In this document: one piece after another, positions 4,034-53,490 of the stretch
How positions within the stretch are numbered: position 1 is the first letter of the stretch
Layout of the letters: each line of letters starts with the position of its first letter
Assembly: GCF_001194135.2 (NCBI RefSeq)
Contig: NC_068984.1
Location: forward strand, 61,695,633-61,759,632
DNA length: 64,000 nt
Direction: 5' to 3'
Origin: Octopus bimaculoides
Lineage: Eukaryota
Translations under genes and position numbers: made by a program
The notes under the pieces: model-generated
Told to the model about the DNA's origin: nothing
Databases searched by the model: none
The model's input: the letters and a program-made list of their open reading frames with translations, nothing else

Positions 4034-4078
<45 letters not shown>

Positions 4079-4080
<2 letters not shown>

Positions 4081-4378
4081 CTGGAAATAGAGGTAACTCG
4101 AATGTGGAATCTAAAAACAGAAACAATTCCTATCATAGTAGGTGCTTTAGGTATAATAAAAAAATATTCAGACAAATACATAACAAAAACACCAGGACTT
4201 GCAAATATATATAACATACAGAAAATTGTACTACTGGGCACTGCACACATCCTACGCAAAACACTTTCAATACAGTAACCATAAGAGTATCACAGCAAAC
4301 CACAGCACATACCCAAGGCACACAGAGCTGCGCTTGGTAGTGAAGTGAAAGCACGTTATAAAAATAAAACTACTGAAC
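4079..4378 (+). mobile_element. R4/Dong-clade 3' fragment (subfamily B)
   Basis: Reads LEIEVTRMWNLKTETIPIIVGALGIIKKYSDKYITKTPGLANIYNIQKIVLLGTAHILRKTLSIQ* (stop 4276-4278), then a 100-nt 3' UTR and (AAT)n. Homologous to 51747-51899. Confidence 0.88.
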
Positions 4379-4392
4379 AATAATAATAATAA

Positions 4393-8200: not shown

Positions 8201-10470
8201 AATAAATTTCTATTGTATTCTGATCTCATATATATGTGTGTGTGCGTACCTGTGTGTGCTGTGTGTGTGCGTGCGTATGTGCGATTGTTGTGCATGTGTA
8301 TACACATAAATACAAATGTCTATATACATACATACATACATACACAATATATATATACATCGTAGATATTGCCGATGGATGGCTGTTCGTAGTTGCAGCA
8401 GCAGAAAGCTTGATGACTGAGGTAGATTTTCTCATTTAGTCTACTTCTTCCATATTAATTGAAATATGTTATTGTTGAGTTGTGTAATCGGTGTAATCGC
8501 TAAACGTATATAAGGAAGAAACCATAAAGTTTGATTGCATCTCATTTGCCTGTGTCGATATGTTAATCGACTTGACTTGTATTTGTCTGCATTTTCGTAT
8601 TATAGTTTCCGATCTACTCTGAGACATGCATTGCTTTATGGATCGTAAAGTTACTCCAATGTAATGTACTTCACATTCTGATTATATATTTGCGTTTATT
8701 AGGTTTCACTAAGATACCTTTGGCTTTTGTAGATGTATAGCTTTTATAAATATTTCATTGTCTTGGAGTGTCTTCTGCAATCTATGTCGGTATATAGTTG
8801 AAGACATCGGTTGAGAAAAGTGCCCTTTCTCAGTGACTGTATGTTTTAGGATATGGTGTTTTAGAATTTGTCATCTAAACCGAATTCTGAGAGGAGCCAA
8901 ATATATATCATTTTGAAAAGGAAAATCAGCTCAAATCAACCGATTCAAATGTTAACGTGGGCCAAACTTCACATAAAATCAACAGAACCAACAATATTAA
9001 AATGCGGAATATCCAACTGTGGTTTATGCTTTCAAACGATGTAATTCGCTTTGTAAAAATGGTAACTGTTCAGAATAACAAAATAACTTCGTCTGCACTT
9101 ATGCAAACTATATCTATGAAATTACATACTCAGGGTGTACAGCGAGAGACACATAGGGAAAATCAGAATGTTCTTAAGAGTGCTCATGACTCTTGCATAG
9201 ATCCCAAATTCGAATACTGGAGTCAGTGAAAATACACTCACAAACACCGGTAAGAAACAATCGAATCATAGGAACTTCCTCTGATATCAATTTGCCGATG
9301 GCACATAGTAATAGCAGCACATCAACAATGAAACAACTTTCATAACTAAATATCGATCACCTCTAAGCACTGTGCAAAAGATAGACCGACTAATACTAAT
9401 ATTTCATGTAAAGATAAATAAATAACTTTATAGAAAACATCTATATTACTGACATGTTTAAGGTTCATTTCTTCTCAGTGAATAATTTTCCTTGAACGTA
9501 TTGGTTTGATATATATATACATATATGCAACCAACTAATTCTCTTAAATTAGCCTCGGGCAATTCCCATATAAAGCATCTCCCCTTTAAATTGTTTTCCA
9601 TTATTTGCTTAAGCTGTATATCCGTTGTTTATAATTTTATCTATCACTATAGACATTATTTTAATATCTTTGGTATTTTTATCATTACATGTAACATACG
9701 ATTCCGGTTGTATCGTATAAATAAGTAAGGAATTTCAGCCTAGCCTTCTTTGAATGAAGCTTTTGTGTGCGAAATGCCCTTGGCCATGAGATTCTAAATG
9801 CACTATAGAAATTTGAAGAATCGAGAAAGCGTATGAAGATTTAAATGATAGCACTTGAAATACTCATAAATTAATGCATTTGCTGAAGTATTTGTTGATG
9901 TTGAAAGTATACACAACAGTAGTAAAGTTAGTGTTAATAACCTTGTTTGAGTGAAGATATTTGTAGTGATGAATGACTGGGTGGTGAAAATTATAATACA
10001 TCTACTAGTTCTAATATTAATGGTGATGCTGATGTGAATAGTGATTTCAATCGCTCTGACATTTGTTTTCGCGATAAAGACAATTTCAATGGTTACGGTT
10101 AGAATGTGGTGTCGGAGAAGGTGAGGATAACTTTGCTACTTCTGCCGCATGATGTTGGTTATTAATGACAATGGTGATAATGATGATGATGGTACAAAGA
10201 TAAGGATTTTATTCAAGCCTCTATTCATAGGTATGATGTCGCAGGTGCATGAGAGCTAATTTTATCATTATTAAATTGTTTGTGGGGTTTCAATAAAACC
10301 CCAGTTCTATCTACAGAAATTTACAAGTAGTAAATTTCCATACACACAAACGAATACACGCAGGCGTAAACACACATATACACACGCACGTGGCACACGC
10401 AAGACACACGTACATGAGTGTATGTGCATATATATATATATACATACACACACATATTTATATATATATA

Positions 10471-11324
10471 GTAGCTGACTTACCCGGTAATTCCCGGGAA
10501 AGCGAGGTTTATCCCTTCGTTCAGTTCTCATAACCGTTTCGCCAGTCCAATAACAACAATACAAAATATATAGCCCTTAAAACGATTTTTGTCCATTTAC
10601 AGAGAGTACCGAACTGTCTTTGACAAGATTTTTAAGGGATTCCCGATAAGTTCTCAATACCCATACTGGGAAGTCAGTTATGTAATAACATGAAATTAGT
10701 TACCCGATTGTAAGAATTCAAATAATGTATCTCCGAAAAAGGTTTAATGGGTTCCTATTGTATATAGAACTTACGAGGAAATACTAATAAAGTATGTATG
10801 CTAAAACTGTGAAGCATGTTACCTAATAATAAGCTAATTAGATATGAAATAATAACAATTCAAAGTAAATTACTCTGAAAAGGACTTTTGTGCGTTCCCG
10901 GGATTACCCTCAGCGGCGCTAGTGTTGGTATATTCGTGAATAAGTCATTAACCGAAATAAGTGGACCTATGTTAAGAAAATACTATTTACTTGTTTAAGT
11001 GTTGTACTGGATAAATTGCGAAAATAAATCTAACATTTCAAATACTAAGAAATACTCAATTTAATTTATGCCAAGTAATTTTGGAAAATGAATATATTGT
11101 TTCTTTTGGCTATATACAAGGATCCCTTCCAGGGGCGAATGAGTTATTACTCTTCCAGGGGGCCTATTATCGATTTGTTCAGCAATCTGAGTATGCCGTG
11201 AGGTTTTCACACATGAGTCCTACTTACGTGGCAAGTATCCTCAAAATCAATACAACGATGTAGGAGGAGTTAGATAACAACTCCAGAAACACCAACACAC
11301 AGATTTTCCTACATAGGTAGTAGG
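10471..11324 (-). mobile_element. Non-autonomous Helitron, copy 1
   Basis: On the minus strand it ends CCCGG-GAATTA-CCGGG-TAAGTCAG-CTAC|T (hairpin plus CTAG-like end). Both terminal segments align with the oppositely oriented copy at 26473-27260. Confidence 0.75.
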
Positions 11325-18580: not shown

Positions 18581-18980
18581 AAGGTGGTGAAGTGGCAGAA
18601 TCGATAGCTCACCGAGCAAAAATGCGTAGGGGCATTTTGTCCGTCTTTACGCTCTGAGCTGAAATCCCGTCGAGGATGATTTTGCCTTTCATTCGTTCGG
18701 GATCTTTCATATCTCTTTAAAATAAGTACCAGTTGAGTACCGGGGGGCTATGTAGTTGCCTTCCCCAAGACAGCTGGCCGACCAAAGCCTTGTGAGTGGA
18801 TTTAGTAGACGGAAACTGAAAGGAAGCCCGTCGTATATATGTATATGTATATGTTTGTGTGTGTGTTTGTGTGTCTGTGTATGTCCCTCACCCAACATCG
18901 CTTGACAACCGATGCTGGTGTGTTTACTTCCTCATAACCTAATGGTTCGGCAAAAGAGACGTATTACTAGGCTTAGAAAG
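18581..18980 (+). mobile_element. Chimeric SINE: family A head and core joined to the family B (CORE-type) body
   Basis: 18581-18750 is AAGGTGGTGAAGTGGCAGAATCG...TTGCCTTTCATT...AAAATAAGTACCAG. From about 18776 it reads GGCCGACCAAAGCCTTGTGAGTGGATTT...CAACATCGCTTGACAACCGATGCTGG, near-identical in layout to 47050-47290. Confidence 0.75.
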
Positions 18981-19495: not shown

Positions 19496-19612
19496 AGTAG
19501 CTGTGTGGTAAGTAGCTTGCTCACCAACCACATGGTTCCGGATTCAATACCACTGCGTGGCACCTTGGGCAAGTGTCTTCTACTATAACCTCGGGCCGAC
19601 CAAAGCCTTGTG
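19496..19612 (+). mobile_element. CORE-type tRNA-derived SINE (family B), 5' half only
   Basis: A-box-like TAGCTGTGTGG, B-box-like GGATTCAATACC and the CORE-like GCACCTTGGGCAAGTGTCTT; abruptly truncated at the mariner TIR. Confidence 0.85.
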
Positions 19613-23959: not shown

Positions 23960-24224
23960 CTATACTAAACAGTCAATAGACAAGGTATTATACTAAAAAG
24001 TCAATAGACAACATATTCTCACTATAAAATAGTGTACATTTAAACACAAGAGAAATTACCTATAACATGAACTACCTATAACTACCTAAACTATCTATAT
24101 ATGTTTATAATTATTAATAAATCTCAGGGTAGCAAAGAATTTTAGAAATTCTATTTGCTACCAGTGGTCTAACGAAAAGAAAAAAACTAGTTAATATACT
24201 ATATATTATTCATATAAATACATA

Positions 24225-24518
24225 CAGTGTACCTTTTAACAGATCAGAGAGATGTCCACAATGGGACATCTTACCCGCTAGAAGGAGCAGTCAAAACTCC
24301 AAACCACAATCAAAGATAATTTCGAAAGGGAATGAAAAATAGGAATATTTACCATCTATTTTGCGGACCATGGTATCCAGAAAATAGATGGTAGATGTTT
24401 TTATTTTTCATTCACTTCCGAAATTATCCCTAATTGTGGTTTGCAGTTTTGACTGCTCCTTCTAGTGGGTAAGATGTCCTATTATGGACAGCTCTCTGAT
24501 GTGTTTAAATGTACACTG
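24225..24518. mobile_element. Fold-back (fully palindromic) Tc1-like MITE
   Basis: TA|CAGTGTAC...GTACACTG|TA. The two ~140-nt arms are complementary along their length (e.g. ATCTTACCCGCTAGAAGGAGCAGTCAAAACT / AGTTTTGACTGCTCCTTCTAGTGGGTAAGAT), centred on CCATGG at 24368-24373. Confidence 0.9.
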
Positions 24519-26472
24519 TATGTATATATATGTTTATATATACATATATATCTTTATATATATGTGGGTGTGAATGCATTTATGTTTGCATGTATATATG
24601 TTCTGTATGTAGATATATGCATTCACTCATACATACGTAAACATATATATTAAAACCCAAACAACCATGAAACACAACTTCACGATAATGTTGTTTATGT
24701 CCACCAGTAATCTGTCGTTTCGAAAAATTACTTTAAAATAATGATCTTAAACATTCCTAAAAGTAGGTGTGTACGTATGCGCATGTGTGTCTTTGTGCGT
24801 ACGTATATATGCTCGTATTTTGGCGCACCAATAGTTCAGTTCGTAAAAACAAGTGTCTCAATGGATTTATTGAGTTAATATTCATACATTTAATCATGAA
24901 TATAATGCGATATATGGAATGCAGTGCAAAACTAAACTGTATCTTAGGCACAAGATATAGATGTTCATGCAACTACAGACATTTCAATATATGTATATGA
25001 TTATGTATATTTATGCGTGTGTATATACACATATGTGTGTGTGTCTTTGTGTACGTACATACATGTGTTTGTATGTGTGTGTGCAGGTGTGTGCATACCT
25101 ATATACATATTGATATATACAAACATACTTACCTATATATGAGTGTGCTTGAACTTATAAATTTGTAATGAATATTTAGAATAAAGAAAAGTGAGATATT
25201 GATATGAATAAATGAAGAAGCTATACAATTCATATTTATTTTTATCTAAAACGGCAGCCAACGACTTTTCATCATGTGATATCTCAAGTTACCTCTACCG
25301 AATATATGGCTTCTGGAAGGAACTTAATCTTCTATTCTCAGAAGAATTTTCCAGCTCCGACTTCCACATTTTCATCTTTAAATTTAGCTCTCGGAAGCTA
25401 CATTGCATAGATATTTTTTCCATATTGATTCTATCGTAATTTTAGGTGTATTTATATTTTTAGCAAAACAAAAAAATATATATTTGTATGAAGTATTGTT
25501 AGGTTCAGATATGAATAAATGAAGCTCTACAATGCAGTTGTTTTTTCATATGAAACAAATCAAAATCATTTTATAATGTGAAAGTTCGATTTGGAAAACA
25601 AACATCCGTAAGAAATAGAAGTGGGTGTAAATGTTGAGATTGTTAACAAACAATCTTGTAGCTACATATATTGCAAAATACTGATAACTGACTGGCTCCT
25701 TTCTACTCAACACGACTTGGCGAACATCATCTGGATAGAAAATGACAATAGTGCCAGTTATGTATAACATACACGAACACGTTCGTACAAACACTTATGT
25801 GTATGTATGTGTATCTGTATGTGAGCGTGTAATAATATTATATTTCGGCTTGACTGCCAACAATGTAACAAAGATATACTTTGGTTGCATTGAGAGATGA
25901 GATAGAAATAAAATATGTTTGTGTGGAGTTCCTAATCTCAAATTATTATTTATCCTTAGAAAAAGCAAAGGGGTTGTTACTGCGAACGAGAAAAGAGAAA
26001 TATTTACACCATGTTAAACTACAGGTTTTGTAAGATGTTCGTGTCAAGAAGGACTGTAGCCATGAGTGGTATGGATTTCTGTAACTAGCAGGCTTAAATT
26101 GTGTCATGAGCAAGGACGTCGTCATAATCACAATCTTCGATGTTAAGTCGTGTAGTTACGGTACCAACGATTTTGGTTGATCGGTAACAACTAGTGAATT
26201 AGAGCAAAAACAATTTATATACGGCTAACTCGGTGCCCAAAAATATGAGGATACATTGCAAAGGGCAATGCCATATATTGTTTACCAGACTGGGATTTAT
26301 TGAGATAGACATTTGCTGGTCCTAAAGTTTTGAGTTAGTAGTTCTTTCATAAGATTACCATTCGTAGGCAGTTTCCTGTTTCTACGATTATTGGTTTTAG
26401 TTCTAAGCACCGTCATCCGGCTTTGAACGATTATGAGACATATTGTTGGTGTTTGGGGCACCAATAAAAATT

Positions 26473-27260
26473 TCTACTACATATGTGGGAAATTCTGTCT
26501 GTTGGTGTATTTCCGGTGTTGTTAGCTAACACTCCCTACATCATTGTATCGATTTTGATGAAACTTGACACATGTATAGAACTCCTGACTTGAAACCTCA
26601 TGACATACTCAGATTGTGGAAACAAAATCGATAATAGGGCCCCTGGAAGGGATCCTTATATATATATATATATATATNNNNNNNNNNNNNNNNNNNNNNN
26701 NNNNNNNNNNNNNNNNNNNNNNNNNNNNNNNNNNNNNNNNNNNNNNNNNNNNNNNNNNNNNNNNNNNNNNNNNNNNNNNNNNNNNNNNNNNNNNNNNNNN
26801 NNNNNNNNNNNNNNNNNNNNNNNNNNNNNNNNNNNNNNNNNNNNNNNNNNNNNNNNNNNNNNNNNNNNNNNNNNNNNNNNNNNNNNNNNNNNNNNNNNNN
26901 NNNNNNNNNNNNNNNNNNNNNNNNNNNNNNNNNNNNNNNNNNNNNNNNNNNNNNNNNNNNNNNNNNNNNNNNNNNNNNNNNNNNNNNNNNNNNNNNNNNA
27001 CGTTATTTGAATTCCTACAATCGGGTAACTAATTTCATGTTATTACATAACTGACATCACAATTTAGGTATTCATAACTTATTGAGAATTCCTGAAAACA
27101 AGATCCTGTGTAAGACAGTCGGTATTTTCAGTAAATGTACAAAAACTGTTTTAAGGGCTACGTACTTTGTATTGTTGTTATTGGATTAGCAAAACAATTA
27201 TGACCACTGAACCAAGGGATAAGCCTCGCTTTGTCGCAGATTACCGGGTGCATCAGCTAG
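26473..27260 (+). mobile_element. Non-autonomous Helitron, copy 2 (spans gap 26678-26999)
   Basis: 5' TCTACTACATATG..., 3' ATTACCGGGTGCATCAG-CTAG|T; both ends align to the reverse complement of 10471-11324. Confidence 0.75.
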
Positions 27261-29909
27261 TGTATATGTGTGTGTGTGTTTGTGTATATATTCATGTATG
27301 TGATATGTGTGTGTGTGTTTGTGTATATATTCATGTATGTGATATGTGTGTGTGTGTACACACCTATATAGATACGAGCACACACATATGTAAACATGTG
27401 TATGTAAATATGTATGTTTATGTGTATGCATACATGTAGACAAATTTGAGCTAAGAAAAATAGATTAATAGAGTGGTTGCGAAAGTTGAATTAAACTATA
27501 TTAAATAACAAGCAGAATGTACTCGTGGTGTATTAAAGTCAACTGTGGTGCGAGTAAATGTTAACAAGCACCTAGTGAGAATTACTACTCAGAACGAGTA
27601 TAGAAGTTAATCTGATGAATGAAAAATTTTTGCGGAACTAATATGCCAATGAGCAAAAGTGGAGTATTTATTTATTATGTCCTGTTAGAATCTGCATGAT
27701 GCAGAGACAAAATATATGGCGACATAACTGGATAAATAGATACAATTTTACAATCTAGTGACATATCTGTTTAGATTTAAGTAAACATGATTTTGATACA
27801 GATATAATTTTTAAACAGAACTCTTTTACTTATCCCTTCATCTTAAATAGTTTATTTTATTAGAGATTTATGATTTTATTAATGCAAGCAGAAAAGTCCT
27901 GATCCTATATTGCCTGTGGATAATGCATTATTTTATTTATATTAGAATATTTGCTATTCTGATTTTGCTGAGGATTTCGGATTTTAACTTAATTTATATG
28001 CAGTCTAGCCTAGTAATAAGATAAGAAATGTTTATAGTAATATATGTTTTTAAAGTTTCTATGTTAATTTCGAATAAAAACAGTAGAAAGACAATAGAGC
28101 AATAATGAAAATATATTTAATATCTTAATGCATTTATCTTGTACATATACAACAGAATAAGTAAAAAATAAGATAGTATTCTATTTAGAAATTAAAGAAT
28201 TCTGCTTTATTCATAATTTACATGACAATCACATACAAACTAAAACACAATCACACATATTCTGATTATTACTTGACGCAAGTATCTGGAATGTATGCGA
28301 CGACTATAAGGATGGTTAAATAACAATAAAAATGAAGAAATGTGTGTGTGACTAAACAAATAATTGGATGAGTAAACGATATTCTGTAACAAAATAACAA
28401 ATAACAGACTACTGAATGCCATGTTCTTAATATTTATTTCCAGTGCAAGTGAACTGAAATGAGACGGACTGATTTCAGTTCTAATATACGCCATAGCAGC
28501 TAATTCACTCAATCAATGAAATATATATATTAATTAAGTTCCTTGCGCATGGGATTACAAAATTGGACTACCATATTAAAGGAATTTGTGACTGTATCAT
28601 TATATAAATGCATAAATATAAATATAATAATACAAGCAATAACATATGCATGTATATACACAGGCACACTCGCAAAAGTGGATATAAGCATAAACATATA
28701 TATCTATAAGTATATATATTCACAGTTAATTATATATATATATAAGATCCAAGGATCGAGGTGTAAGAAGGTTAGTTTCAAGCAATCCGTAGTAAATATA
28801 TATAAAAATCAACAACATTCAGGGACAATAGTGGTTTATTGACACGGAAGGATGTGGATTGTTTTCTTATCGAACTACAATAAATTGTTAAAAGTTATTT
28901 ATATTTCACGGTATGTAACTAGGATTGCGGGGTATGCAAATAAGAATACAAGGAATGAAGTAGACAAGACTGTATATGCCCATCTTCAGGTGAATAGAAT
29001 CGAATGCCTTGCGAAACGATATTTTGATCCTCCATATTTTATACATATGTCGCAAACCGAAAAATAAATCAGTACAGTTAAGGTGCAGAATCTCATAAAA
29101 AGATAAACTTTAACAATTACTATCTCTTATGCCTTTCACTGTTCCACTTCAAGGAGAACCAATGACACATCCTGAACTACTTCAAAACACAAAATAATCC
29201 TAAAATCTGTTATTTTGCAGACTTAACTTTAGATGTATATACCACTACCAGAGCTTGCATAATGCAGTACAACATGACATAGTCAGTGGTACAAAGTTCA
29301 TAGCCGTATAATGCATTCTCAGTATCATGCTGTTTTTATGGTTGGAAAGGACACTAGGCATCATACTATGCAATGACAACGTCATTAACAAGCACTCTGA
29401 ATGTGTTTAAAAATGTAACCACGAGCTCGATTTGGAATTTAGAAGAAACCATTGATATTTAACAGTATGTGAAACACTTATTTAGTCACTCGTGTATCAA
29501 TTATTTTTCTGATTTATTATATTGTCAAATTGGAAAATAACTATGTGTGCATACAGTTGTTTGTCTAAAAGTGTGTACAAATATAGGATCAATGAATTTG
29601 TTACTACTTATTGATATAAATATTTACGATGTGTAATTATAGAATGAATATTGAATGTATTTCTATAGAAGTATTATTACATGTGAACGGACATATAACA
29701 ATATGTAAAACTAGGTCTGTCCTAACAAAATTTATAAGTTCCCCTATACCTATTCTTTTTATAATAATATTAAATTCATAATTCTAAATGAATTGATGTA
29801 AATATGAAAAAACATTAATATGTGAGTGTATTTGTAGTTATCCTAAGTAGGGTAGCATAAAGGTGTACGCATTGATGAAAGTGAAAAGTGTGAGTTTATG
29901 TTGGCATAA

Positions 29910-34975: not shown

Positions 34976-37210
34976 CACTGGTCAACAGCCAATTTTCATC
35001 AGGGATATTATATAGTGTTTTATGTGTAGTTTTGTCTGCAGATTTCAAAAATGTAATCGGTTTCCTTCTATCAGGCACAATTTTTCTGATGAGATAAGAG
35101 AGGTATATAACTACCATCAGCAGTATCGCTACACGCAAACGTCTGATACAGGTAAATTCTGACTTTCGTTTTATAACTATTTGTATTCATTTTGTAATTA
35201 AATGTTTTCATAATCTTTTCTTTTCATAAATTTTACTTTCTGTTTTAGGTGGCAAGTCATCATCATCATCAAATTCTAATCAGGATGTCAAGGCATTGCA
35301 AGAACAGTCCTGATATATTTTGTTATGTCTGTGGTTCATTTACCACCAAAGCTCAGCAACGTACCGTCACAAGTGAAATCAAGAGGATCTACCAGTTATG
35401 CTTTGGCTGCTCTCTCAAGATAAGAATTGGGCGCCGCACATTATCTGCTCAGCTTGTGCAAATAGACTAAGGGGTTGGCTAAATAAGAGGAAGAGAGCAA
35501 TACCGTTTGCAATACATATCATATGGAGAGAGCCAAAGCATCATTTCATGGACTGTTATTTCTGCAACGTTAATGTATGTGGGTTTACTATAAATACCAA
35601 GCATAAGATTGTGTATCCCAACTTGGAATCAGCAAGACGACCAGTACCACACAACGATGATGATCTTACTATTCCAATACCATCAGGAAATGGCCTTCAG
35701 ATGTCTGACGAAAATGCATTTCCTGAAGATAATACTACTAGTGTGGAAGACACCGAAGCGGATGTACATTTCACGATTGAAAATGAAGACGTACCACAGA
35801 AATTTTCTCAGGGAGAGTTAAATGATTTAGTCAGAGACTTGTCATTGTCGAAGGATAAAGCTGAACTATAAGCATCTCGCTTACAAGAAAAGTGTCTGCT
35901 TAAGAAAGATATTTGTATTACTCATTTCAGGAAGAGAAATAGGGATCTGACTTCACTTCATGCTTTTCTGTTGATGGGCCACTTTGTTTCAGTAATAACA
36001 CTGATGAGTTATTTCGCTGTTTGTTCCAAGAACATGTTCCAGTTGAATGGCGCTTATTCATTGATTCATGTAAGAGAAGCCTCAAGGCAGTACTACTACA
36101 CAACGGCAATAAGAAACCATCCATTCTCATAGGACATTCAGTGCACATAAAGGAGTGTTATGAAAACATGCAAGTACTCCTCAATGCTATAAAGTATACA
36201 AACTACAGCTGGAAAATATGTGGAGACTTGAAGGTGATTGGTATGTTGATGGGAATGCAATCTGGGTTCCCGAAATAGTGTTGCTTTTTATGGTTATGGG
36301 ACACTCGTGCAACTAACAATCACTATGTACAATCAGAGTAGCCTATGCAAAAATCATATGAGCCGGGAGTTTCTCGCGTGCAGAGTAAGCCACTTTTAAT
36401 CCCAGAAAATGTTCTTATTATCTCGCTTCACATAAAGCTTGGCGTCATGAAACAATTCGTGAAGACACTTGCCAGGAAGGACAAATTTCCAAAAGTCCCC
36501 GAAGCAAAACTGAAGGAGGGCGTATTCATAGGTCCTCAGATAAAAGAACTCCTGAAGGACAACCACTTCCTCACAGCACTGGAGGAGATTGAGCTTAAAG
36601 CATGGGAATGACTCTGTGAAAATTTCTTAGGCAACAAGAGATCTCTAGAGTTCAGAAATGGAGTGAAATGTCCTCTAGACTCCTACACTGCAATGGGCTG
36701 TCGGACGTCACAAAAAGTCTATTTCCTTGATTTACATCTGGACGTTTTTGAAGAGAACCATGGCGCAGTGTTTGATGAGGAAGGGGAACGCTTTCATCAA
36801 GATATTGCATGGATAGAACAACCATATCAAGGATTTTGGAATGCAAGAATGTTAGCTGACTACTGTTGGATGTCATACAGGGGTGAACCTGAGACAAAAC
36901 ACCATCGAAAGTCCAAATCCCAGCGATCTTAAGTTGTTATGCATTTGAGTGTATTCTAACTTATTTGTACACAATAATTTTAATTTTGTATAATAAAAAA
37001 CCATGAAATTATCGTATCTTGCATTGAATATGCTTTATATAGACATGCTTTATGTATTATATAAGTTAAAACAGCAGGTATAATTAACATGAAAATGTGA
37101 CCTGATCGAGGAACTCGGACTTCAGATTCGTAATCAGCATCACAAATTAACCCAGAAAAGTCAATCAGCAACTCTGATGATTTAAAATAGTTTCATTTTG
37201 TTGACCAGTG
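34976..37210 (+). mobile_element. Chapaev3-type DNA transposon, full length, defective
   Basis: TAA|CACTGGTCAACA ... TGTTGACCAGTG|TAA: 12-bp perfect TIR, 3-bp TWA TSD and CAC...GTG termini, plus degenerate subterminal inverted repeats. 2235 bp. Confidence 0.88.
35285..36932 (+). pseudogene. Chapaev-family transposase pseudogene
   Basis: MSRHCKNSPDIFCYVCG...WAPHIICSAC...WREPKHHFMDCYFC (N-terminal Zn finger); LNDLVRDLSLSKDKAEL; WRLFIDS...LKAVLLHNGN; CGDLKVIGMLMG; LHIKLG; EGVFIGPQI; DEEGERFHQDI; MLADYCW. In-frame stops at about 36276, 36339 and 36609 plus frameshifts. A GT-AG 5'-UTR intron lies at 35152-35248. Confidence 0.9.
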
Positions 37211-45745: not shown

Positions 45746-45852
45746 CTGTGTGTAGATAAAAAAAAACAGATAAAAACAAACACATAAAAGTAAACAAATA
45801 AAAGCTTCACAAAATATATGTAAAATATATATACTTTAAATTTAATTTTTTA

Positions 45853-46026
45853 TTTTTATTAGTTTCAGTCATTTGACTGGAGCCATGCTGGAGCACCCCC
45901 TTTAGTCGAGCAAATCGATCCCAGAACTTATTCTATCGGTCTCTGTTGCCGAACCGCTAAGTGACGGGGATGTAAACATATCAGCATTGGTTGTCAAGCG
46001 ATGTTGGGGTGACAGACACAGACACA

Positions 46027-46069
<43 letters not shown>

Positions 46070-46356
46070 NNNNNNNNNNNNNNNNNNNNNNNNNNNNNNN
46101 NNNNNNNNNNNNNNNNNNNNNNNNNNNNNNNNNNNNNNNNNNNNNNNNNNNNNNNNNNNNNNNNNNNNNNNNNNNNNNNNNNNNATATATATACGAGCAG
46201 CTTCTTTCAGTTTCCATGAACCAAATCCACTCACAAGGCTTTGGTCGCTCCGAGGCTATAGTAGAAGACACTTGCCCAAGGTGCTACGCAGTGGGATTGA
46301 ACCCAGAACCATGTGGTTGGTAAGCAAGCTACTTACCACACAGCCACTCCTGCGCC
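45853..46356 (-). mobile_element. CORE-type tRNA-derived SINE (family B), full length
   Basis: Reverse complement begins GGCGCAGGAGTGGCTGTGTGGTAAGTAGCTTGC..., has GCACCTTGGGCAAGTGTCTT and an internal (TG/TA)n, and ends GACTGAAACTAATAAAAA. Confidence 0.92.
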
Positions 46357-46945
46357 TATATATGAAACAAATATGCAAAATATTAAGGCAATTCACGAAA
46401 AATACCTACAATAAAATTCTAATTGATAAATATAAATTTTTATAAAAACAAAACACGCGGGTGAAGTGAATCTTGTGGTGTGAAGAATCGACACAACACA
46501 ACGTGCGGGTGAAATTGGCTAAAATTACCCAAATGTCCCAACTTTAATTCCAAATAACATCACATTCTTTAATTTAAGACATAAAGTAATTAGTTGAGCA
46601 AAATCAAATTCCAGAATTGCATCGATAAACCAAATAGAAAACAATCTAAGCAAAATTAAAGGGGATTAATTTTGAGAATGAATTCAATTAGATCCCATCA
46701 ATAGACCAAATTTTAAAATTGTCACTAAACTTTAAACTTTCCGCAGGTGCAGCCAAACAGAAAAGATCCCAGATGGGGACATAGCATTAGCGATTGTACA
46801 ATTAAAGAACACGATCGTGATTCGCTAAAATATTACTAGCGTCATAAAAAAGAATCTGACCGTTCAAGATTTTGTGTGGAACCGGACTTAATAACAATGC
46901 CATATTTTGTCTGGATAGTCTCACCATGGCAATCACTATATATAC

Positions 46946-47374
46946 AGCACAGGAGTGGCTGAGTGGTAAGTAGCTTGCCTTCCAACAACATGGTTCCGGG
47001 TTGAGTCCCACTGCGTGGCACCTTGGATAAGTGTCTTCTATTATAGCCTCGGGCCGACCAAAGCCTTGTGAGTGGATTTGGTAGTCAGAAGCTGAAAGAA
47101 TCTCATCGTATATATATGTATATGTATATATATGTGTGTGTGTGTGTGTGTGCGTGTGTGTGTGTGTGTGTGTGTCTGTGTTTGTCCCCCCAACATCGCT
47201 TGACAACCGATGCTGGTGTGTCTACGCCCCCGTCACTTAACAGTTCAGCAAAATGGACCGATAGAATAACTACTAGACCTACAAAGGATAAGTTCTGGGG
47301 TCGATTTGCTCGACTAAAGGCGGTGCTCCAGCATGGCCGCAGTCAAACGACTGAAACAAGTAAAGAGTAAAAGA
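46946..47374 (+). mobile_element. CORE-type tRNA-derived SINE (family B), full length
   Basis: AGCACAGGAGTGGCTGAGTGGTAAG...GGTTGAGTCCC...GCACCTTGGATAAGTGTCTT...GACTGAAACAAGTAAAGAGTAAAAGAG. Confidence 0.92.
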
Positions 47375-50096: not shown

Positions 50097-50497
50097 ATGC
50101 AAATTTGCATTATGTGGATTTCTTGATTTATGTCAAATCGATATATTCCGTGTAGGGCGGAAGTAGCATCTTGATGAATAGTTCAAACCCTACAGGTCTA
50201 TAAATAGATTCGGTAGTTGGTGGGGAGGTCAGCCATAGAGACAAAAGAATCTTCGAATCTTTAGGTCAGCAAAGGTCAAATGTGTTTACTACTACTAGAG
50301 ACTACTGAGAGTGCTGACCTGCTGACCTTGCCCTTGAAAGAAGCAATTCACCATGTTCTAATTGTCATTACTGGTAGAGAAAACAATAATATTTATATAT
50401 GTGCTGACATTCACGTCGATGAATTTTTTAATGGCTGACGTGACAGCAGATGGACGTGACAGAGGTTGGACGTGTTCTTCGCTGCTCTGACCTGTCA
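50097..50497. promoter_or_regulatory. Dense cis-regulatory module (nuclear-receptor/Maf half-sites, octamer, MEF2, GC/ETS, ACGTG repeats)
   Basis: ATGCAAATTTGCAT 50097-50110; GGGCGGAAGT 50155-50164; CTATAAATAG 50198-50207; AGGTCA at 50226, 50263 and 50273; TGACCT at 50315, 50323 and 50488; ACGTG at 50438, 50454 and 50470. Confidence 0.6.
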
Positions 50498-50561
50498 GTA
50501 AATGAAGACACAGAAACACTAATACAACCCAGCAGGACAACTGAAAAACAACTCTCAAAAA
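50492..50561 (-). CDS. Candidate signal-peptide exon (phase 0 to phase 1): FLRVVFQLSCWVVLVFLCLHLLT(G)
   Basis: Acceptor ATATTTCAG| (or TTTTTCAG| further in), donor ACAG|GTCAGA in phase 1, matching exon 45615-45745. Hydrophobic stretch with no ATG inside. T-rich DNA gives hydrophobic translations by default, so support is weak. Confidence 0.3.
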
Positions 50562-50565
50562 CTGA

Positions 50566-51522
50566 AATATCTACAATTCCCTGTCAGTATTTTGAATTGC
50601 CTTCAAAATAAGTTAAGAAACTTAAATATGTATAGTTTTCGAACACATAAACGATCAACTTTAAAAACTCTAACATCTACAACTTCTGTGAATACCTATC
50701 CTTTCCTTTCTGTCTAAGTATTCGGAAAAGTAAACATCCTCTTGATTCTACGAACACTACAATTTTCTCTGTTCGGACAGACAAAAGATCATCTCCAGTA
50801 AATTTTAAAACCTTAAATCTATAATTGTCTGAAAATTTTACTATCCTTTTCTTTTCTTTCCTCTCTCCCTAAACATTCGAAAATATAAACATCCTTTTTA
50901 TTGCAAAATCTCTAGTCCTCTCTGCACGGGCATACAGACGAACATCTCTCAATAAAAGTTAGAAACTTTAATAACTCCAATTGTGTGTGCACATGTTATT
51001 TTTCCTTTTTCCCTGACTACCCGAATATGTAAACATGCTTTTTATTGTAACAACACAATTAAATGCAGCCCCCCCCCCCNNNNNNNNNNNNNNNNNNNNN
51101 NNNNNNNNNNNNNNNNNNNNACACAAAAAATTAAGGAGGTAAGGACCTGCCAATATATACATACTGCACAACTACAAAAGCTGTAAGCCACAGCAAAACG
51201 TTTAAAAAGAAATGAAACATTCCAAAAGAGAAAGAACTTTAGAAATTCAAAAATGCAACAATATGATCATCTCTTCCTCCTACTATTCCCAAAGACTGGA
51301 ATATCTACAATTTCCTGTGAATATTTTAAATTGCTCTGAAAATAAGTTCGGAATCTTACATACCTACAGCTTTCGAACACACACATGATCAGTTCAGAGA
51401 AAAAAACTCTAGTAACTACAACTTCTGTGAATACCTATCCTTTCCATCCTTCTTGAGTATTCGAAAATGTAAACATCCATTTCATTGCAAAAATACTACT
51501 GTATTCTCTAACTGGATAAACG
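50566..51522 (+). repeat. Diverged direct-repeat array (~225-240-bp unit; two full copies and one partial)
   Basis: 50566-50790 and 51299-51522 share AATATCTACAATT..CTGT..TATTTT.AATTGC..AAAATAAGTT..TTTCGAACACA..AAAAACTCTA..CTACAACTTCTGTGAATACCTATCCTTTCC..AGTATTCG.AAA.GTAAACATCC; a partial copy lies at about 50835-50910. Confidence 0.8.
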
Positions 51523-51622
51523 TTTCGCTGTCATTCCCAGGGCACCTATGACAATAGGTATTGTTTTAGTCTTCAGATTCCACATTTTGATAATTTCTAT
51601 TTCGAGATCTTTATATTTGCTC
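51523..51622 (-). mobile_element. R4/Dong-clade RLE fragment (subfamily C)
   Basis: Minus strand reads SKYKDLEIEIIKMWNLKTKTIPIVIGALGMTAK; preceded on its 5' side by (AAT)n. Confidence 0.8.
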
Positions 51623-51626
51623 TATC

Positions 51627-51899
<273 letters not shown>

Positions 51900-51951
51900 T
51901 ATTATTGTTATTATTATTATTATTATTATTATGATTATTATGATTATTATG

Positions 51952-51985
<34 letters not shown>

Positions 51986-53490
51986 CAAAAAGTATCAACA
52001 GTATCAAAAGCAATCTTATGCAAAATAAATAAAAAAACAGACTAAAACAAAAGCAACAACATCAAATAGTTAGAATACAAACGATGGTTCTTTTTCTTAC
52101 TTTCAGGTAGTCAATAATCTCTCACCTTCCCCCTTTGAATCGCTGAAAAATTTAGTTGTACCCATACTAAAATGCAGCTTCTTTGAAGAAGTTATCGGCA
52201 TGTAACTCTTATTCAGATTAGTATATCGATGAATATGTACAAATTTAAACTTGCAAATTATGATGTAAGATATTACATACACAGAATAGCGATTTGCTGT
52301 AAATCCTATTTCAATGTCCTCCACCTTTATTTTCCGCTCTTTGTGTTGTCCATAGAATAATGGTAATTATAACAAGAATTTGTAATTAACTTTAGAACAA
52401 TTAATATTCTTATAATTAAATACATTTCTAATTATAATTAATATAATTATAATTAATAAAATCGCATGTTTAGCGGTTTCTATCAATGTTCTTATAGATT
52501 GGTATTATTGTGTTAGATATAACTAATTAATCGTATTTATTCATATGGCTCACATTAGCTGACCCATGTAAACTATCTTCTAAAAGTTTTGAAGGCGTCC
52601 GCCACAAAAGAAAGAGATAAAAAGGATAAAAATGTACACGAGTACTTAAATGAACATGAAACAATCTACGAAGTGATATAAAGCTTAAATAAGATAACCA
52701 AATGTTGAATTTCTTCTAAATATTTAGGAGGACAAATAACAGATGCTCTATGTCTCGATGACTTCATTATATCAAAATTACTTAGCATTATATTTTAGTC
52801 TCAGTTGACGAATTGGCTATTGTAGCATTCGTTTTATAACTTAGCCTAGTGACCTGTCAGTTATCGACTTGCAATATACGAACAAAGAGATCAATCAATA
52901 TTTAGGTTCATCATATATTGAATTATATGGCATATTAATCGATATAGAGTACTCAATTAATGTAGTTTCACACAAAGCCAATGCATATGAAAACATCTAA
53001 AATTAATAAATATAAAATACAATATGTACCATGCCTATGTTTGTCTGTAAGTGCTGGAGTGAAAATCAGTTTATACTATTGTAAATACAAACGAAAATGC
53101 ACTTGGAGATATCTCCAATCATTTCTCGTGTCTGAAGGCAGTTTTACTGGTGATCACACTAAGTGTTAAAATAGCAAGTTATCAAATTCGAAACTGAACG
53201 TTAGGTAACTAATAATAATGCCTATTGTTTTAATAATTACGATATATTGTGAAATATTTCCCCTTTTATTTAGTTATAATGAATAACAACGTAATTATCA
53301 TGCACATTATATATTACATTCTCAGCAGTAATCCTGTTTTGTTATTAAATATAAATTAACTGCCATAAATATTTTTGGTTAGAAAATATTATAGTGATTA
53401 ATTTAATTAAACAAATCCCCATTCTTTTAAAAGCGTCGCATGTTATTCTCTATTTAAAATTTCATAAAAGAATGTGTTCTCAGCATTCCT

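What the first reader, a model, noticed from the sequence alone, without database searches (positions are those of the whole stretch)
50226..50497. Exceptional cluster of nuclear-receptor (or Maf) half-sites
Seen: six perfect AGGTCA in about 270 bp (rough expectation about 0.1 at this base composition). They form a DR4 (50263-50278) whose second half is an NBRE AAAGGTCA, a DR2 (50315-50328) extended by AGGGCA into a triple array containing CAAGGTCA, and singletons at 50226 and 50488 (TGACAGGTCA, overlapping a TALE TGACAG site). Established: DR4, DR2, NBRE and CAAGGTCA are elements for TR/EcR-type, RAR/Rev-erb, NR4A and FTZ-F1/ERR receptors. Alternative reading: GCTGAC occurs six times (50228, 50265, 50313, 50321, 50403, 50434), the Maf half-site. 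Inference: a hormone- or activity-responsive enhancer or promoter for the adjacent minus-strand gene, which would link receptor signalling to an unknown peptide.
Basis: partly seen in the sequence, partly recalled or inferred. Interest (0 to 1): 0.7.

Follow-up and report, generated by a model that had tools for sequence, protein, structure and literature searches.

The report
Short-repeat block rich in receptor half-sites
A 280-base stretch of repeat-rich animal DNA really does hold six perfect nuclear-receptor half-sites, but they are copies of a longer 8-9-base word multiplied by small local duplications, no neighbouring gene could be found, and a regulatory role cannot be shown or excluded from sequence alone.

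Summary
Six AGGTCA lie at the stated coordinates, and so do the DR4, the DR2 plus AGGGCA, the NBRE, CAAGGTCA, TGACAGGTCA and six GCTGAC. The whole window is not enriched (20 found, 22 expected). The local cluster is the strongest of any non-self-overlapping hexamer, and 0 of 300 Markov simulations come near it.

The repeated unit is longer than a half-site. AGGTCAGC occurs four times, and these are the only exact copies in 64 kb. TGCTGACCT occurs three times. The four copies sit two forward and two reverse, as nested inverted repeats. Three to four micro-tandem duplications lie inside the block. A second cluster, GACGTG x4, mostly comes from a 16-bp unit repeated 2.4 times.

The block is single-copy in the window and matches no tRNA, Rfam family or neighbouring repeat. 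Its ORFs have no homologue. The "adjacent minus-strand peptide gene" is unsupported: the only signal-peptide-like ORF has no ATG and no relative.

My best guess (about 45%) is a locally duplicated short-repeat block with no demonstrated function. The main rival (about 30%) is a real composite enhancer or promoter. The source genome, related species and chromatin data could not be reached, so the decisive tests remain undone.

The parts
50199..50206 (+). TATAAATA, 32 nt upstream of the A in gGTCAGCC (50231), which is an Inr-like TCAG
   Evidence: There are 19 TATAAATA in the window on both strands, and two of them flank the core of this block. This is a motif-level observation only.
50226..50233 (+). 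AGGTCAGC copy 1, the outer left arm of the nested inverted repeat
   Evidence: It pairs with 50321-50330 in the folds, and appears as inverted repeat I1.
50247..50262 (+). Micro-tandem duplication GAATCTTC GAATCTTT
   Evidence: Read. The 7-mer AAGATTC occurs twice. It falls below the TRF score threshold.
50263..50278 (+). AGGTCAGCAAAGGTCA: copy 2 of the 8-/9-mer plus AAAGGTCA. This is a DR4 with an NBRE-type second half, and the inner left arm of the inverted repeat.
50291..50310 (+). Micro-tandem ACTACTNAG x2.1, in the loop between the arms
   Evidence: TRF.
50312..50334 (-). (TGCTGACC)x2.1 followed by TTGCCCT. On the minus strand this reads AGGGCA-AGGTCA-gc-AGGTCA (DR0 plus DR2, with CAAGGTCA). 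It holds copies 3 and 4 of the 8-/9-mer and forms the right arms of the inverted repeat.
   Evidence: TRF reports 100% matches. Also.
50390..50397 (-). TATAAATA on the minus strand, pointing leftward. It is convergent with the one at 50199.
50402..50420 (+). TGCTGACAT (a Maf-type half-site with an AT-rich 5' flank) followed by TCACGTCGAT, an inverted copy of the GACGTG unit
   Evidence: Inverted repeat I3: 10 nt, 90% complementary to 50450-50459.
50433..50474 (+). GGCTGACGTGACAG followed by a 16-bp tandem (GACGTGACAGNNGNTG) x2.4. This gives three GACGTG, two TGACAG and one TGACGTGA (CRE/UPRE-like).
   Evidence: TRF reports 86% matches. Four of the window's 13 GACGTG lie in the block.
50488..50499 (-). 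TGACCTGTCAGT, which reads TGACAGGTCA on the minus strand. This is the sixth AGGTCA, overlapping a TGACAG.
   Evidence: The same 12-mer recurs once at 52850, at chance level (E = 1.2).
50361..50570 (-). 70-codon open frame with a hydrophobic stretch. I judge it non-coding.
   Evidence: It has no ATG. It contains a 16-bp tandem repeat, whose unit is not a multiple of 3. It gave 0 hits and is not on record.

Best explanation
The block (about 50219-50500) is a single-copy patch of 'cryptically simple' DNA. I think it was built by repeated small local duplications, tandem and inverted, of a few short words. It sits in repeat-laden, apparently gene-free DNA of an AT-rich animal genome.

The multiplied word is the 8-9-mer TGCTGACCT (AGGTCAGCA on the other strand), and AGGTCA is just its core. 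A second word, GACGTGACAG, was multiplied by a 16-bp tandem triplication.

Shown: the extended identity of the copies, the tandem duplications, the nested inverted layout, and the absence of a detectable gene or RNA. Inferred: replication slippage and template switching produced the pattern, and the receptor or Maf sites are incidental. Any protein binding would be opportunistic rather than selected.
For: 1. The sites share more than the half-site. AGGTCAG occurs 5 times, AGGTCAGC 4 times (the only exact copies in 64 kb) and AGGTCAGCA 3 times, while the 5' flanks all differ. Nuclear receptors read the 5' flank, not a 3' GCA (established knowledge).
2. Direct evidence of duplication lies inside 280 bp: TGCTGACC x2.1 at 100%, a 16-bp unit x2.4 at 86%, ACTACTNAG x2.1 and GAATCTTY x2.
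3. Such micro-duplications are a common mutational product in this genome, about one per 1.1 kb and 65 TRF rows in the window. The block's overall 7-mer redundancy is only at the 79th percentile of windows.
4. The surroundings are repeats. A degenerate tandem array begins 50 bp to the right, at 50553-51510. A retroelement-like tail with (TAT)n follows at 51.5-52.0 kb.
5. There is no CpG island, no Rfam or tRNA match, no credible ORF and no protein homologue for any frame.
6. Prior from the literature: in human, 90% of perfect-consensus DR2 and 50% of DR4 elements lie in repeats rather than in classical response elements (PMC1785376).
Against: 1. Every motif class occurs in both orientations: AGGTCAGC 2 forward and 2 reverse, GACGTG 3 and 1, TGACAG 2 and 1. 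Slippage alone makes only direct copies. A mix of orientations is what binding-site clusters look like.
2. No other complex 8-mer in the window shows a 2x2 nested inverted arrangement.
3. Two different motif clusters sit next to each other, with two perfect TATAAATA, and local G+C is raised to 38-43% against 33%. That looks enhancer- or promoter-like.
4. The cluster is far beyond a Markov null.
5. Neutrality was not tested. No conservation or chromatin data were reachable.
Confidence: 0.45

Rival explanations
1. A genuine composite cis-regulatory module, either an enhancer or a TATA promoter. The left half would hold DR4, DR2, NBRE and SF-1-type nuclear-receptor sites that overlap TGCTGAC Maf half-sites. 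The right half would hold tandem ACGTG-core sites (bZIP CRE/UPRE-like TGACGTGA, or bHLH-PAS RCGTG) with TALE TGACAG sites. Small duplications would have multiplied the sites under selection for stronger or cooperative binding.
For: - The cluster is significant after correction across all hexamers.
- Canonical spacings are present.
- Both orientations occur for each motif class, and two adjacent clusters of a single motif lie side by side.
- TATAAATA at 50199(+) lies 32 nt before a TCAG, and TATAAATA at 50390(-) lies 40-50 nt downstream of TGACGTGA.
- The block is single-copy in the window.
- Molluscs and other invertebrates carry NR4A, FTZ-F1, ERR, RXR, TR and E75 orthologues (PMC4070562, PMC4388693).
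Against: - No target gene was found within the stretches searched.
- Shared 3' flanks point to copying rather than convergent site gain.
- Six perfect consensus sites are unusual for natural response elements, which are usually degenerate (general knowledge).
- There is no CpG island.
- No conservation, expression or chromatin evidence of any kind could be obtained.
Confidence: 0.3
2. A remnant of a mobile element, for example the subterminal region of a DNA transposon. Such regions carry many short transposase-binding words in both orientations within 200-300 bp of an end, as in Ac/Ds or En/Spm. The half-sites would be hitch-hikers, as in Alu-borne DR2 elements.
For: - The layout, an 8-9-mer in direct and inverted copies within about 100 bp beside an internal tandem array, matches subterminal-repeat architecture (established knowledge of hAT and CACTA elements).
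- The window is dense in mobile-element debris.
- Most perfect DR elements in human lie in repeats (PMC1785376).
Against: - No second copy or opposite end lies in the 64 kb.
- No terminal inverted repeat or target-site duplication was found.
- The block has no similarity to the neighbouring array or to the retroelement-like tail.
- No transposase ORF is adjacent.
Confidence: 0.15
3. A structured transcript or DNA hairpin locus. The nested inverted 9-mers would form a hairpin, perhaps transcribed from the convergent TATA boxes to give a hairpin or double-stranded RNA.
For: - Both strands of 50210-50340 fold better than shuffles. The plus strand gives z = -2.27 (4 of 200 shuffles as good). The minus strand gives z = -2.53 (0 of 200).
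- The two TATAAATA are convergent.
Against: - The stems are only 9-10 bp and are separated by large loops, so this is not microRNA-like.
- The z-scores are modest.
- There is no Rfam match.
- There is no transcript evidence.
Confidence: 0.05

Closest known systems
DR-type hormone response elements (DR4 TR/LXR-type, DR2 RAR/Rev-erb-type), NBRE (AAAGGTCA) and SF-1/FTZ-F1/ERR element (YCAAGGTCA)
   Same: Perfect RGGTCA hexamers occur at 4-nt and 2-nt direct spacing, and both extended monomer sites are present.
   Different: No binding, hormone response or target gene is shown. Four sites share an identical 3' GC(A) that receptors do not read. Two sites come from an 8-bp tandem duplication.
Repeat-borne consensus DR elements (Alu-DR2/DR4; PMC1785376; HNF4 sites in Alu, PMC3252374)
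   Same: There are several perfect AGGTCA in a short stretch, and their multiplicity comes from copying rather than from independent site evolution.
   Different: Here the copying is local, within 280 bp. The block is single-copy in the window and shows no SINE or tRNA features.
Maf recognition element half-sites (TGCTGAC)
   Same: TGCTGAC occurs 4 times out of 8 in the whole window, and GCTGAC 6 times. The copy at 50402 has the AT-rich 5' flank typical of half-site binding (from memory).
   Different: There is no full palindromic MARE (TGCTGA(C/G)TCAGCA). The other three copies lack AT-rich flanks.
Cryptically simple sequence, or micro-duplication hot spots produced by slippage and template switching
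   Same: Several short words are each present 2-5 times and three to four micro-tandem repeats are interleaved. Such events are common across the window.
   Different: The words are G+C-balanced and complex, and they occur in nested inverted orientation. That is unique in this window.
Subterminal repeats of hAT and CACTA DNA transposons
   Same: A short word recurs in direct and inverted copies within about 100-300 bp, next to an internal tandem array.
   Different: There is no terminal inverted repeat, no target-site duplication, no second end and no other copy.
ACGTG-core elements (CRE/UPRE TGACGTGR; hypoxia-type RCGTG)
   Same: There is one TGACGTGA and four GACGTG in 62 bp. GGACGTGACA resembles the PGK1 hypoxia element as I remember it.
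   Different: Three of the four copies come from one 16-bp tandem repeat. No factor or response was tested, and the PGK1 resemblance is recalled from memory, not checked.

Membership tests
Nuclear-receptor hormone response element | Two or more RGGTCA half-sites as direct repeats spaced 0-5 nt, or extended monomer sites | tested here: met
   DR4 at 50263-50278. DR0 plus DR2 at 50315-50334 on the minus strand. AAAGGTCA and CAAGGTCA are both present.
Nuclear-receptor hormone response element | Bound by a receptor and confers ligand- or activity-dependent transcription | not testable with these tools
   This needs EMSA, DAP-seq or ChIP, plus reporter assays.
Nuclear-receptor hormone response element | Linked to a regulated gene | tested here: not met
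   No credible ORF lies nearby. ORFs of 38 aa or more from 49.1-51.55 kb, and ORFs of 50 aa or more that passed a low-complexity filter from 44-49 and 52-60 kb, have no homologue (positive control). Distant targets and short exons are not excluded.
Enhancer or promoter (cis-regulatory module) | Sequence conservation above flanks in related species | not testable with these tools
   No collection here holds the source genome or its relatives. The metagenome scans were empty.
Enhancer or promoter (cis-regulatory module) | Core-promoter motifs or a CpG island | tested here: inconclusive
   TATAAATA lies at 50199(+) and 50390(-), but there are 19 in the window. CpG observed/expected is 0.28-0.70, so there is no island.
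Interspersed repeat (SINE, MITE, DNA transposon or LINE fragment) | Multiple dispersed copies | tested here: inconclusive
   The window holds no other copy. Genome-wide copy number could not be measured.
Interspersed repeat (SINE, MITE, DNA transposon or LINE fragment) | Structural hallmarks: a tRNA-like head, terminal inverted repeats with a target-site duplication, or similarity to the neighbouring retroelement-like tail | tested here: not met
   No tRNA or Rfam signal. No long-range inverted repeat. No similarity to the retroelement-like tail copy or to the array.
Tandem or cryptically simple repeat | Head-to-tail copies of short units, with words over-represented locally | tested here: met
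   TRF finds an 8-bp unit x2.1 (100%), a 16-bp unit x2.4 (86%) and a 9/10-bp unit x2.1. The repeated 7-mers are listed.
Maf recognition element | Palindromic TGCTGA(C/G)TCAGCA or TGCTGACGTCAGCA | tested here: not met
   Only half-sites occur: TGCTGAC x4 and GCTGACGT x1. No full palindrome is present.
microRNA or structured RNA gene | A continuous stem of about 22 bp, or a match to a known family | tested here: not met
   The stems are 9-10 bp with large internal loops, and z is about -2.3 to -2.5. No Rfam match.
   The 70-codon frame at 50361-50570(-) has no ATG and spans a 16-bp repeat. It has 0 hits among 1.84 billion representatives. No other candidate was found.

The most novel reading that the evidence does not exclude
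The block is a lineage-specific composite switch that assembled itself by micro-duplication. Nested, inverted copies of a 9-mer fuse a nuclear-receptor half-site to a Maf half-site (TGCTGACCT). Convergent TATA boxes bracket them, and a tandem ACGTG-core array sits beside them. The element would integrate hormone or activity signals with stress or bZIP signals on a distant or still unannotated gene.
Probability: 0.2. Interest if true: 0.5.

Novelty: new member of a known kind. Interest (0 to 1): 0.22.

Why it matters
If the block proved to be a working enhancer, it would be a compact, easily mutated test-bed for nuclear-receptor and Maf/bZIP signalling in an invertebrate where almost no response elements are mapped. 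It would also show binding-site clusters being born through micro-duplication.

If it is neutral, as I think somewhat more likely, it is a useful caution. Perfect-consensus motif clusters can look extremely significant against a composition null and still be products of local copying. Shared flanks and tandem structure should be checked before a regulatory role is inferred.

Tried and rejected
1. tRNA-derived SINE head. TTCGAATC and TAGTTGGTGG look like B and A boxes, but ARAGORN found nothing and a permissive Rfam scan gave only chance hits elsewhere.
2. Any known RNA family. There were none at gathering threshold.
3. microRNA or hairpin RNA. The stems are too short and the z-scores are only about -2.3 to -2.5.
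4. MITE or foldback element, or the end of a DNA transposon. There is no terminal repeat, no target-site duplication, no second copy and no partner cluster to the right.
5. A 3' UTR or tail of the neighbouring retroelement-like sequence. There is no similarity to the other copy at 4.0-4.5 kb.
6. A diverged unit of the adjacent tandem array. The local alignment scores are no better than shuffles.
7. A CRESS-virus-type origin (stem-loop, iterons and a nonanucleotide). The best match is only a 7 of 9 match to TAGTATTAC, in a 40-nt loop, with no Rep-like ORF. I dropped this idea.
8. A peptide gene. See the membership table.
9. CpG island. There is none.
10. Finding relatives. Two metagenome pattern scans were empty. 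Three exact-protein look-ups were not on record.
11. Naming the organism. This failed. The only informative hits are metazoan copies of a mobile-element protein, from a mantis shrimp, frogs and an aphid.
12. Pfam on ten putative mobile-element ORFs. Nothing passed, so my LINE and mariner labels rest on recalled motifs and on in-window repetition only.

Full report
**Observation.** AGGTCA occurs at 50226, 50263 and 50273 on the plus strand and at 50315, 50323 and 50488 on the minus strand. GCTGAC occurs at the six stated positions. The DR4 (AGGTCAgcaaAGGTCA), the minus-strand AGGGCA-AGGTCA-gc-AGGTCA, AAAGGTCA, CAAGGTCA and TGACAGGTCA are all present.

**Is it more than chance?** The window as a whole has 20 AGGTCA against 22.4 expected, so nothing is unusual globally. 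Six in 272 bp against 0.088 expected gives a nominal Poisson p of 6e-10. To correct for having looked everywhere, I scanned all 1816 non-self-overlapping hexamers. This cluster is the most extreme in the real window. In 300 order-2 Markov simulations the best cluster never fell below 4.8e-8. An earlier version that included self-overlapping words gave a misleading 11%, because homopolymer-like words clump. So the cluster is real relative to composition.

**Anatomy.**
- The repeated unit is longer than a half-site. AGGTCAG occurs 5 times, AGGTCAGC 4 times (the only exact copies in 64 kb) and AGGTCAGCA/TGCTGACCT 3 times. The 5' neighbours all differ (G, T, A, C, A, C).
- The four 8-mers lie two forward (50226, 50263) and two reverse (50313, 50321). 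They form nested inverted repeats that fold modestly better than shuffles, with z = -2.3 and -2.5.
- The reverse pair is a perfect 8-bp tandem duplication (TRF).
- The block also holds GAATCTTY x2 (50247-50262), ACTACTNAG x2.1 (50291-50310) and a 16-bp unit GACGTGACAGNNGNTG x2.4 (50437-50474).
- The 16-bp unit creates a second cluster: 4 of the window's 13 GACGTG, plus 3 TGACAG and one TGACGTGA. One inverted copy lies at 50411-50420.
- TGAC cores point leftward on the left of about 50295 and rightward on the right of it.
- Two perfect TATAAATA, at 50199(+) and 50390(-), face each other across the core.
- G+C is 38-43% against 33% for the window. CpG is not enriched.

**Surroundings.**
- The window is AT-rich and full of N gaps, microsatellites and repeat families.
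- Fifty bases to the right begins a degenerate tandem array at 50553-51510. Within it, 50553-50770 matches 51287-51509 at 77%, and there are sub-repeats of about 155 bp.
- Next comes a retroelement-like tail on the minus strand at about 51.5-52.0 kb, interrupted by (TAT)n. It resembles 4.03-4.39 kb.
- The block matches none of these. It gives no tRNA or Rfam signal.

**Is there a gene?**
- No ATG-initiated ORF with a signal-like start lies nearby.
- The only frame with a hydrophobic run (minus strand, 50361-50570) has no ATG, spans the 16-bp repeat and has no relative in an exhaustive search of 1.84 billion representatives.
- I searched concatenated ORFs against 5.8 billion proteins: ORFs of 38 aa or more from 49.1-51.55 kb, and ORFs of 50 aa or more that passed a low-complexity filter from 44-49 and 52-60 kb. 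Neither query gave any hit.
- The same query format, with mobile-element ORFs from 35.4-36.9 kb added, returned 266 hits. The method therefore works, and the block's frames are truly unmatched.
- Exact-protein look-ups found nothing.
- The "adjacent minus-strand peptide gene" is therefore unsupported.

**Related sequences elsewhere.** None could be obtained. The DNA collections available are prokaryotic, viral or metagenomic. Two metagenome scans, one for the DR4-loop-DR2 pattern and one for the GACGTGACAG tandem, were empty. The organism could not be named. The mobile-element protein's relatives are metazoan: a mantis shrimp at 74%, frogs and an aphid.

**Interpretation: the case for local copying.**
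- The copies share 3' flanks that receptors do not read.
- Three to four micro-tandem duplications lie within 280 bp.
- Micro-duplication is frequent in this genome, about one per 1.1 kb.
- The block's overall word redundancy is unremarkable, at the 79th percentile.
- The setting is repeat-rich and gene-poor.
- In human, 90% of perfect DR2 and 50% of perfect DR4 elements sit in repeats (PMC1785376).

**Interpretation: the case against pure neutrality.**
- Each word class occurs in both orientations, which slippage alone does not produce.
- The 2x2 nested inverted layout is unique in the window.
- Two motif clusters plus two TATA boxes sit together.

**Weighting.** I put about 45% on a locally duplicated short-repeat block without selected function. 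A true composite enhancer or promoter gets about 30%, a mobile-element remnant about 15% and a hairpin-RNA locus about 5%. It is simply untested.

**Comparison with known kinds.** By sequence syntax alone the block meets the definition of DR-type response elements and of Maf half-sites, though not of a full MARE. It also meets the definition of a short tandem or cryptically simple repeat. It fails the structural tests for a SINE, a MITE or transposon end, a microRNA and a peptide gene. Binding, response, conservation and genome copy number could not be tested.

**Verdict.** The cluster is real and statistically striking, but its significance shrinks once copying is recognised. It is ordinary in kind and of low to moderate interest. 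A genome-wide BLAST and a cross-species alignment would settle most of the question.

Noticed in passing
window 50553-51510: A degenerate tandem array starts 50 bp right of the block. 50553-50770 matches 51287-51509 at 77%, a 735-bp higher-order period. There are also sub-repeats of about 155 bp (50701-50906 against 50856-51050), and an N gap interrupts the array at 51081-51120.
   Followed up: partly
window 51508-52030 (minus) and 4034-4392 (plus): Two copies of a retroelement-like tail (frames such as ...MWNLKT.TIP..GALG... and ...NIYNIQK..LL...) are interleaved with (TAT)n/(AAT)n microsatellites. The LINE label is from memory of the motif. Pfam gave nothing.
   Followed up: partly
window 35377-36929 (plus): Frameshifted ORFs of a DNA-transposon-like protein have 266 homologues across Metazoa. 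The best is 74% identical to an 'uncharacterized protein' of the mantis shrimp Oratosquilla oratoria, and others come from frogs and an aphid. This patchy spread suggests a horizontally spread mobile element.
   Followed up: partly
window 24200-24542: A 343-bp sequence is 85.5% identical to its own reverse complement, making it a large near-perfect palindrome.
   Followed up: no
window 18776-18960, 19496-19612, 45848-46363, 46938-47372: A short interspersed repeat family has four to five copies. Two of them form an inverted pair at 45.85-47.37 kb. Their translated frames carry a tRNA-like 'GIEPRT' signature (my reading). The AGGTCA block is unrelated to this family.
   Followed up: no
window 10427-11323 versus 26474-27300: Inverted copies of another repeat are about 80% identical and about 16 kb apart.
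   Followed up: no
window 50488-50499 and 52850-52861: The 12-mer TGACCTGTCAGT, which holds the sixth AGGTCA and a TGACAG, recurs once in the same orientation 2.4 kb to the right. The BLAST E-value is 1.2, so this is compatible with chance.
   Followed up: yes
whole window: There are 2409 N in many gaps, and very abundant (AC)n, (AG)n, (TAT)n and (ATAG)n microsatellites. This indicates a draft assembly of a repeat-rich animal genome. CpG observed/expected is 0.79 overall.
   Followed up: no
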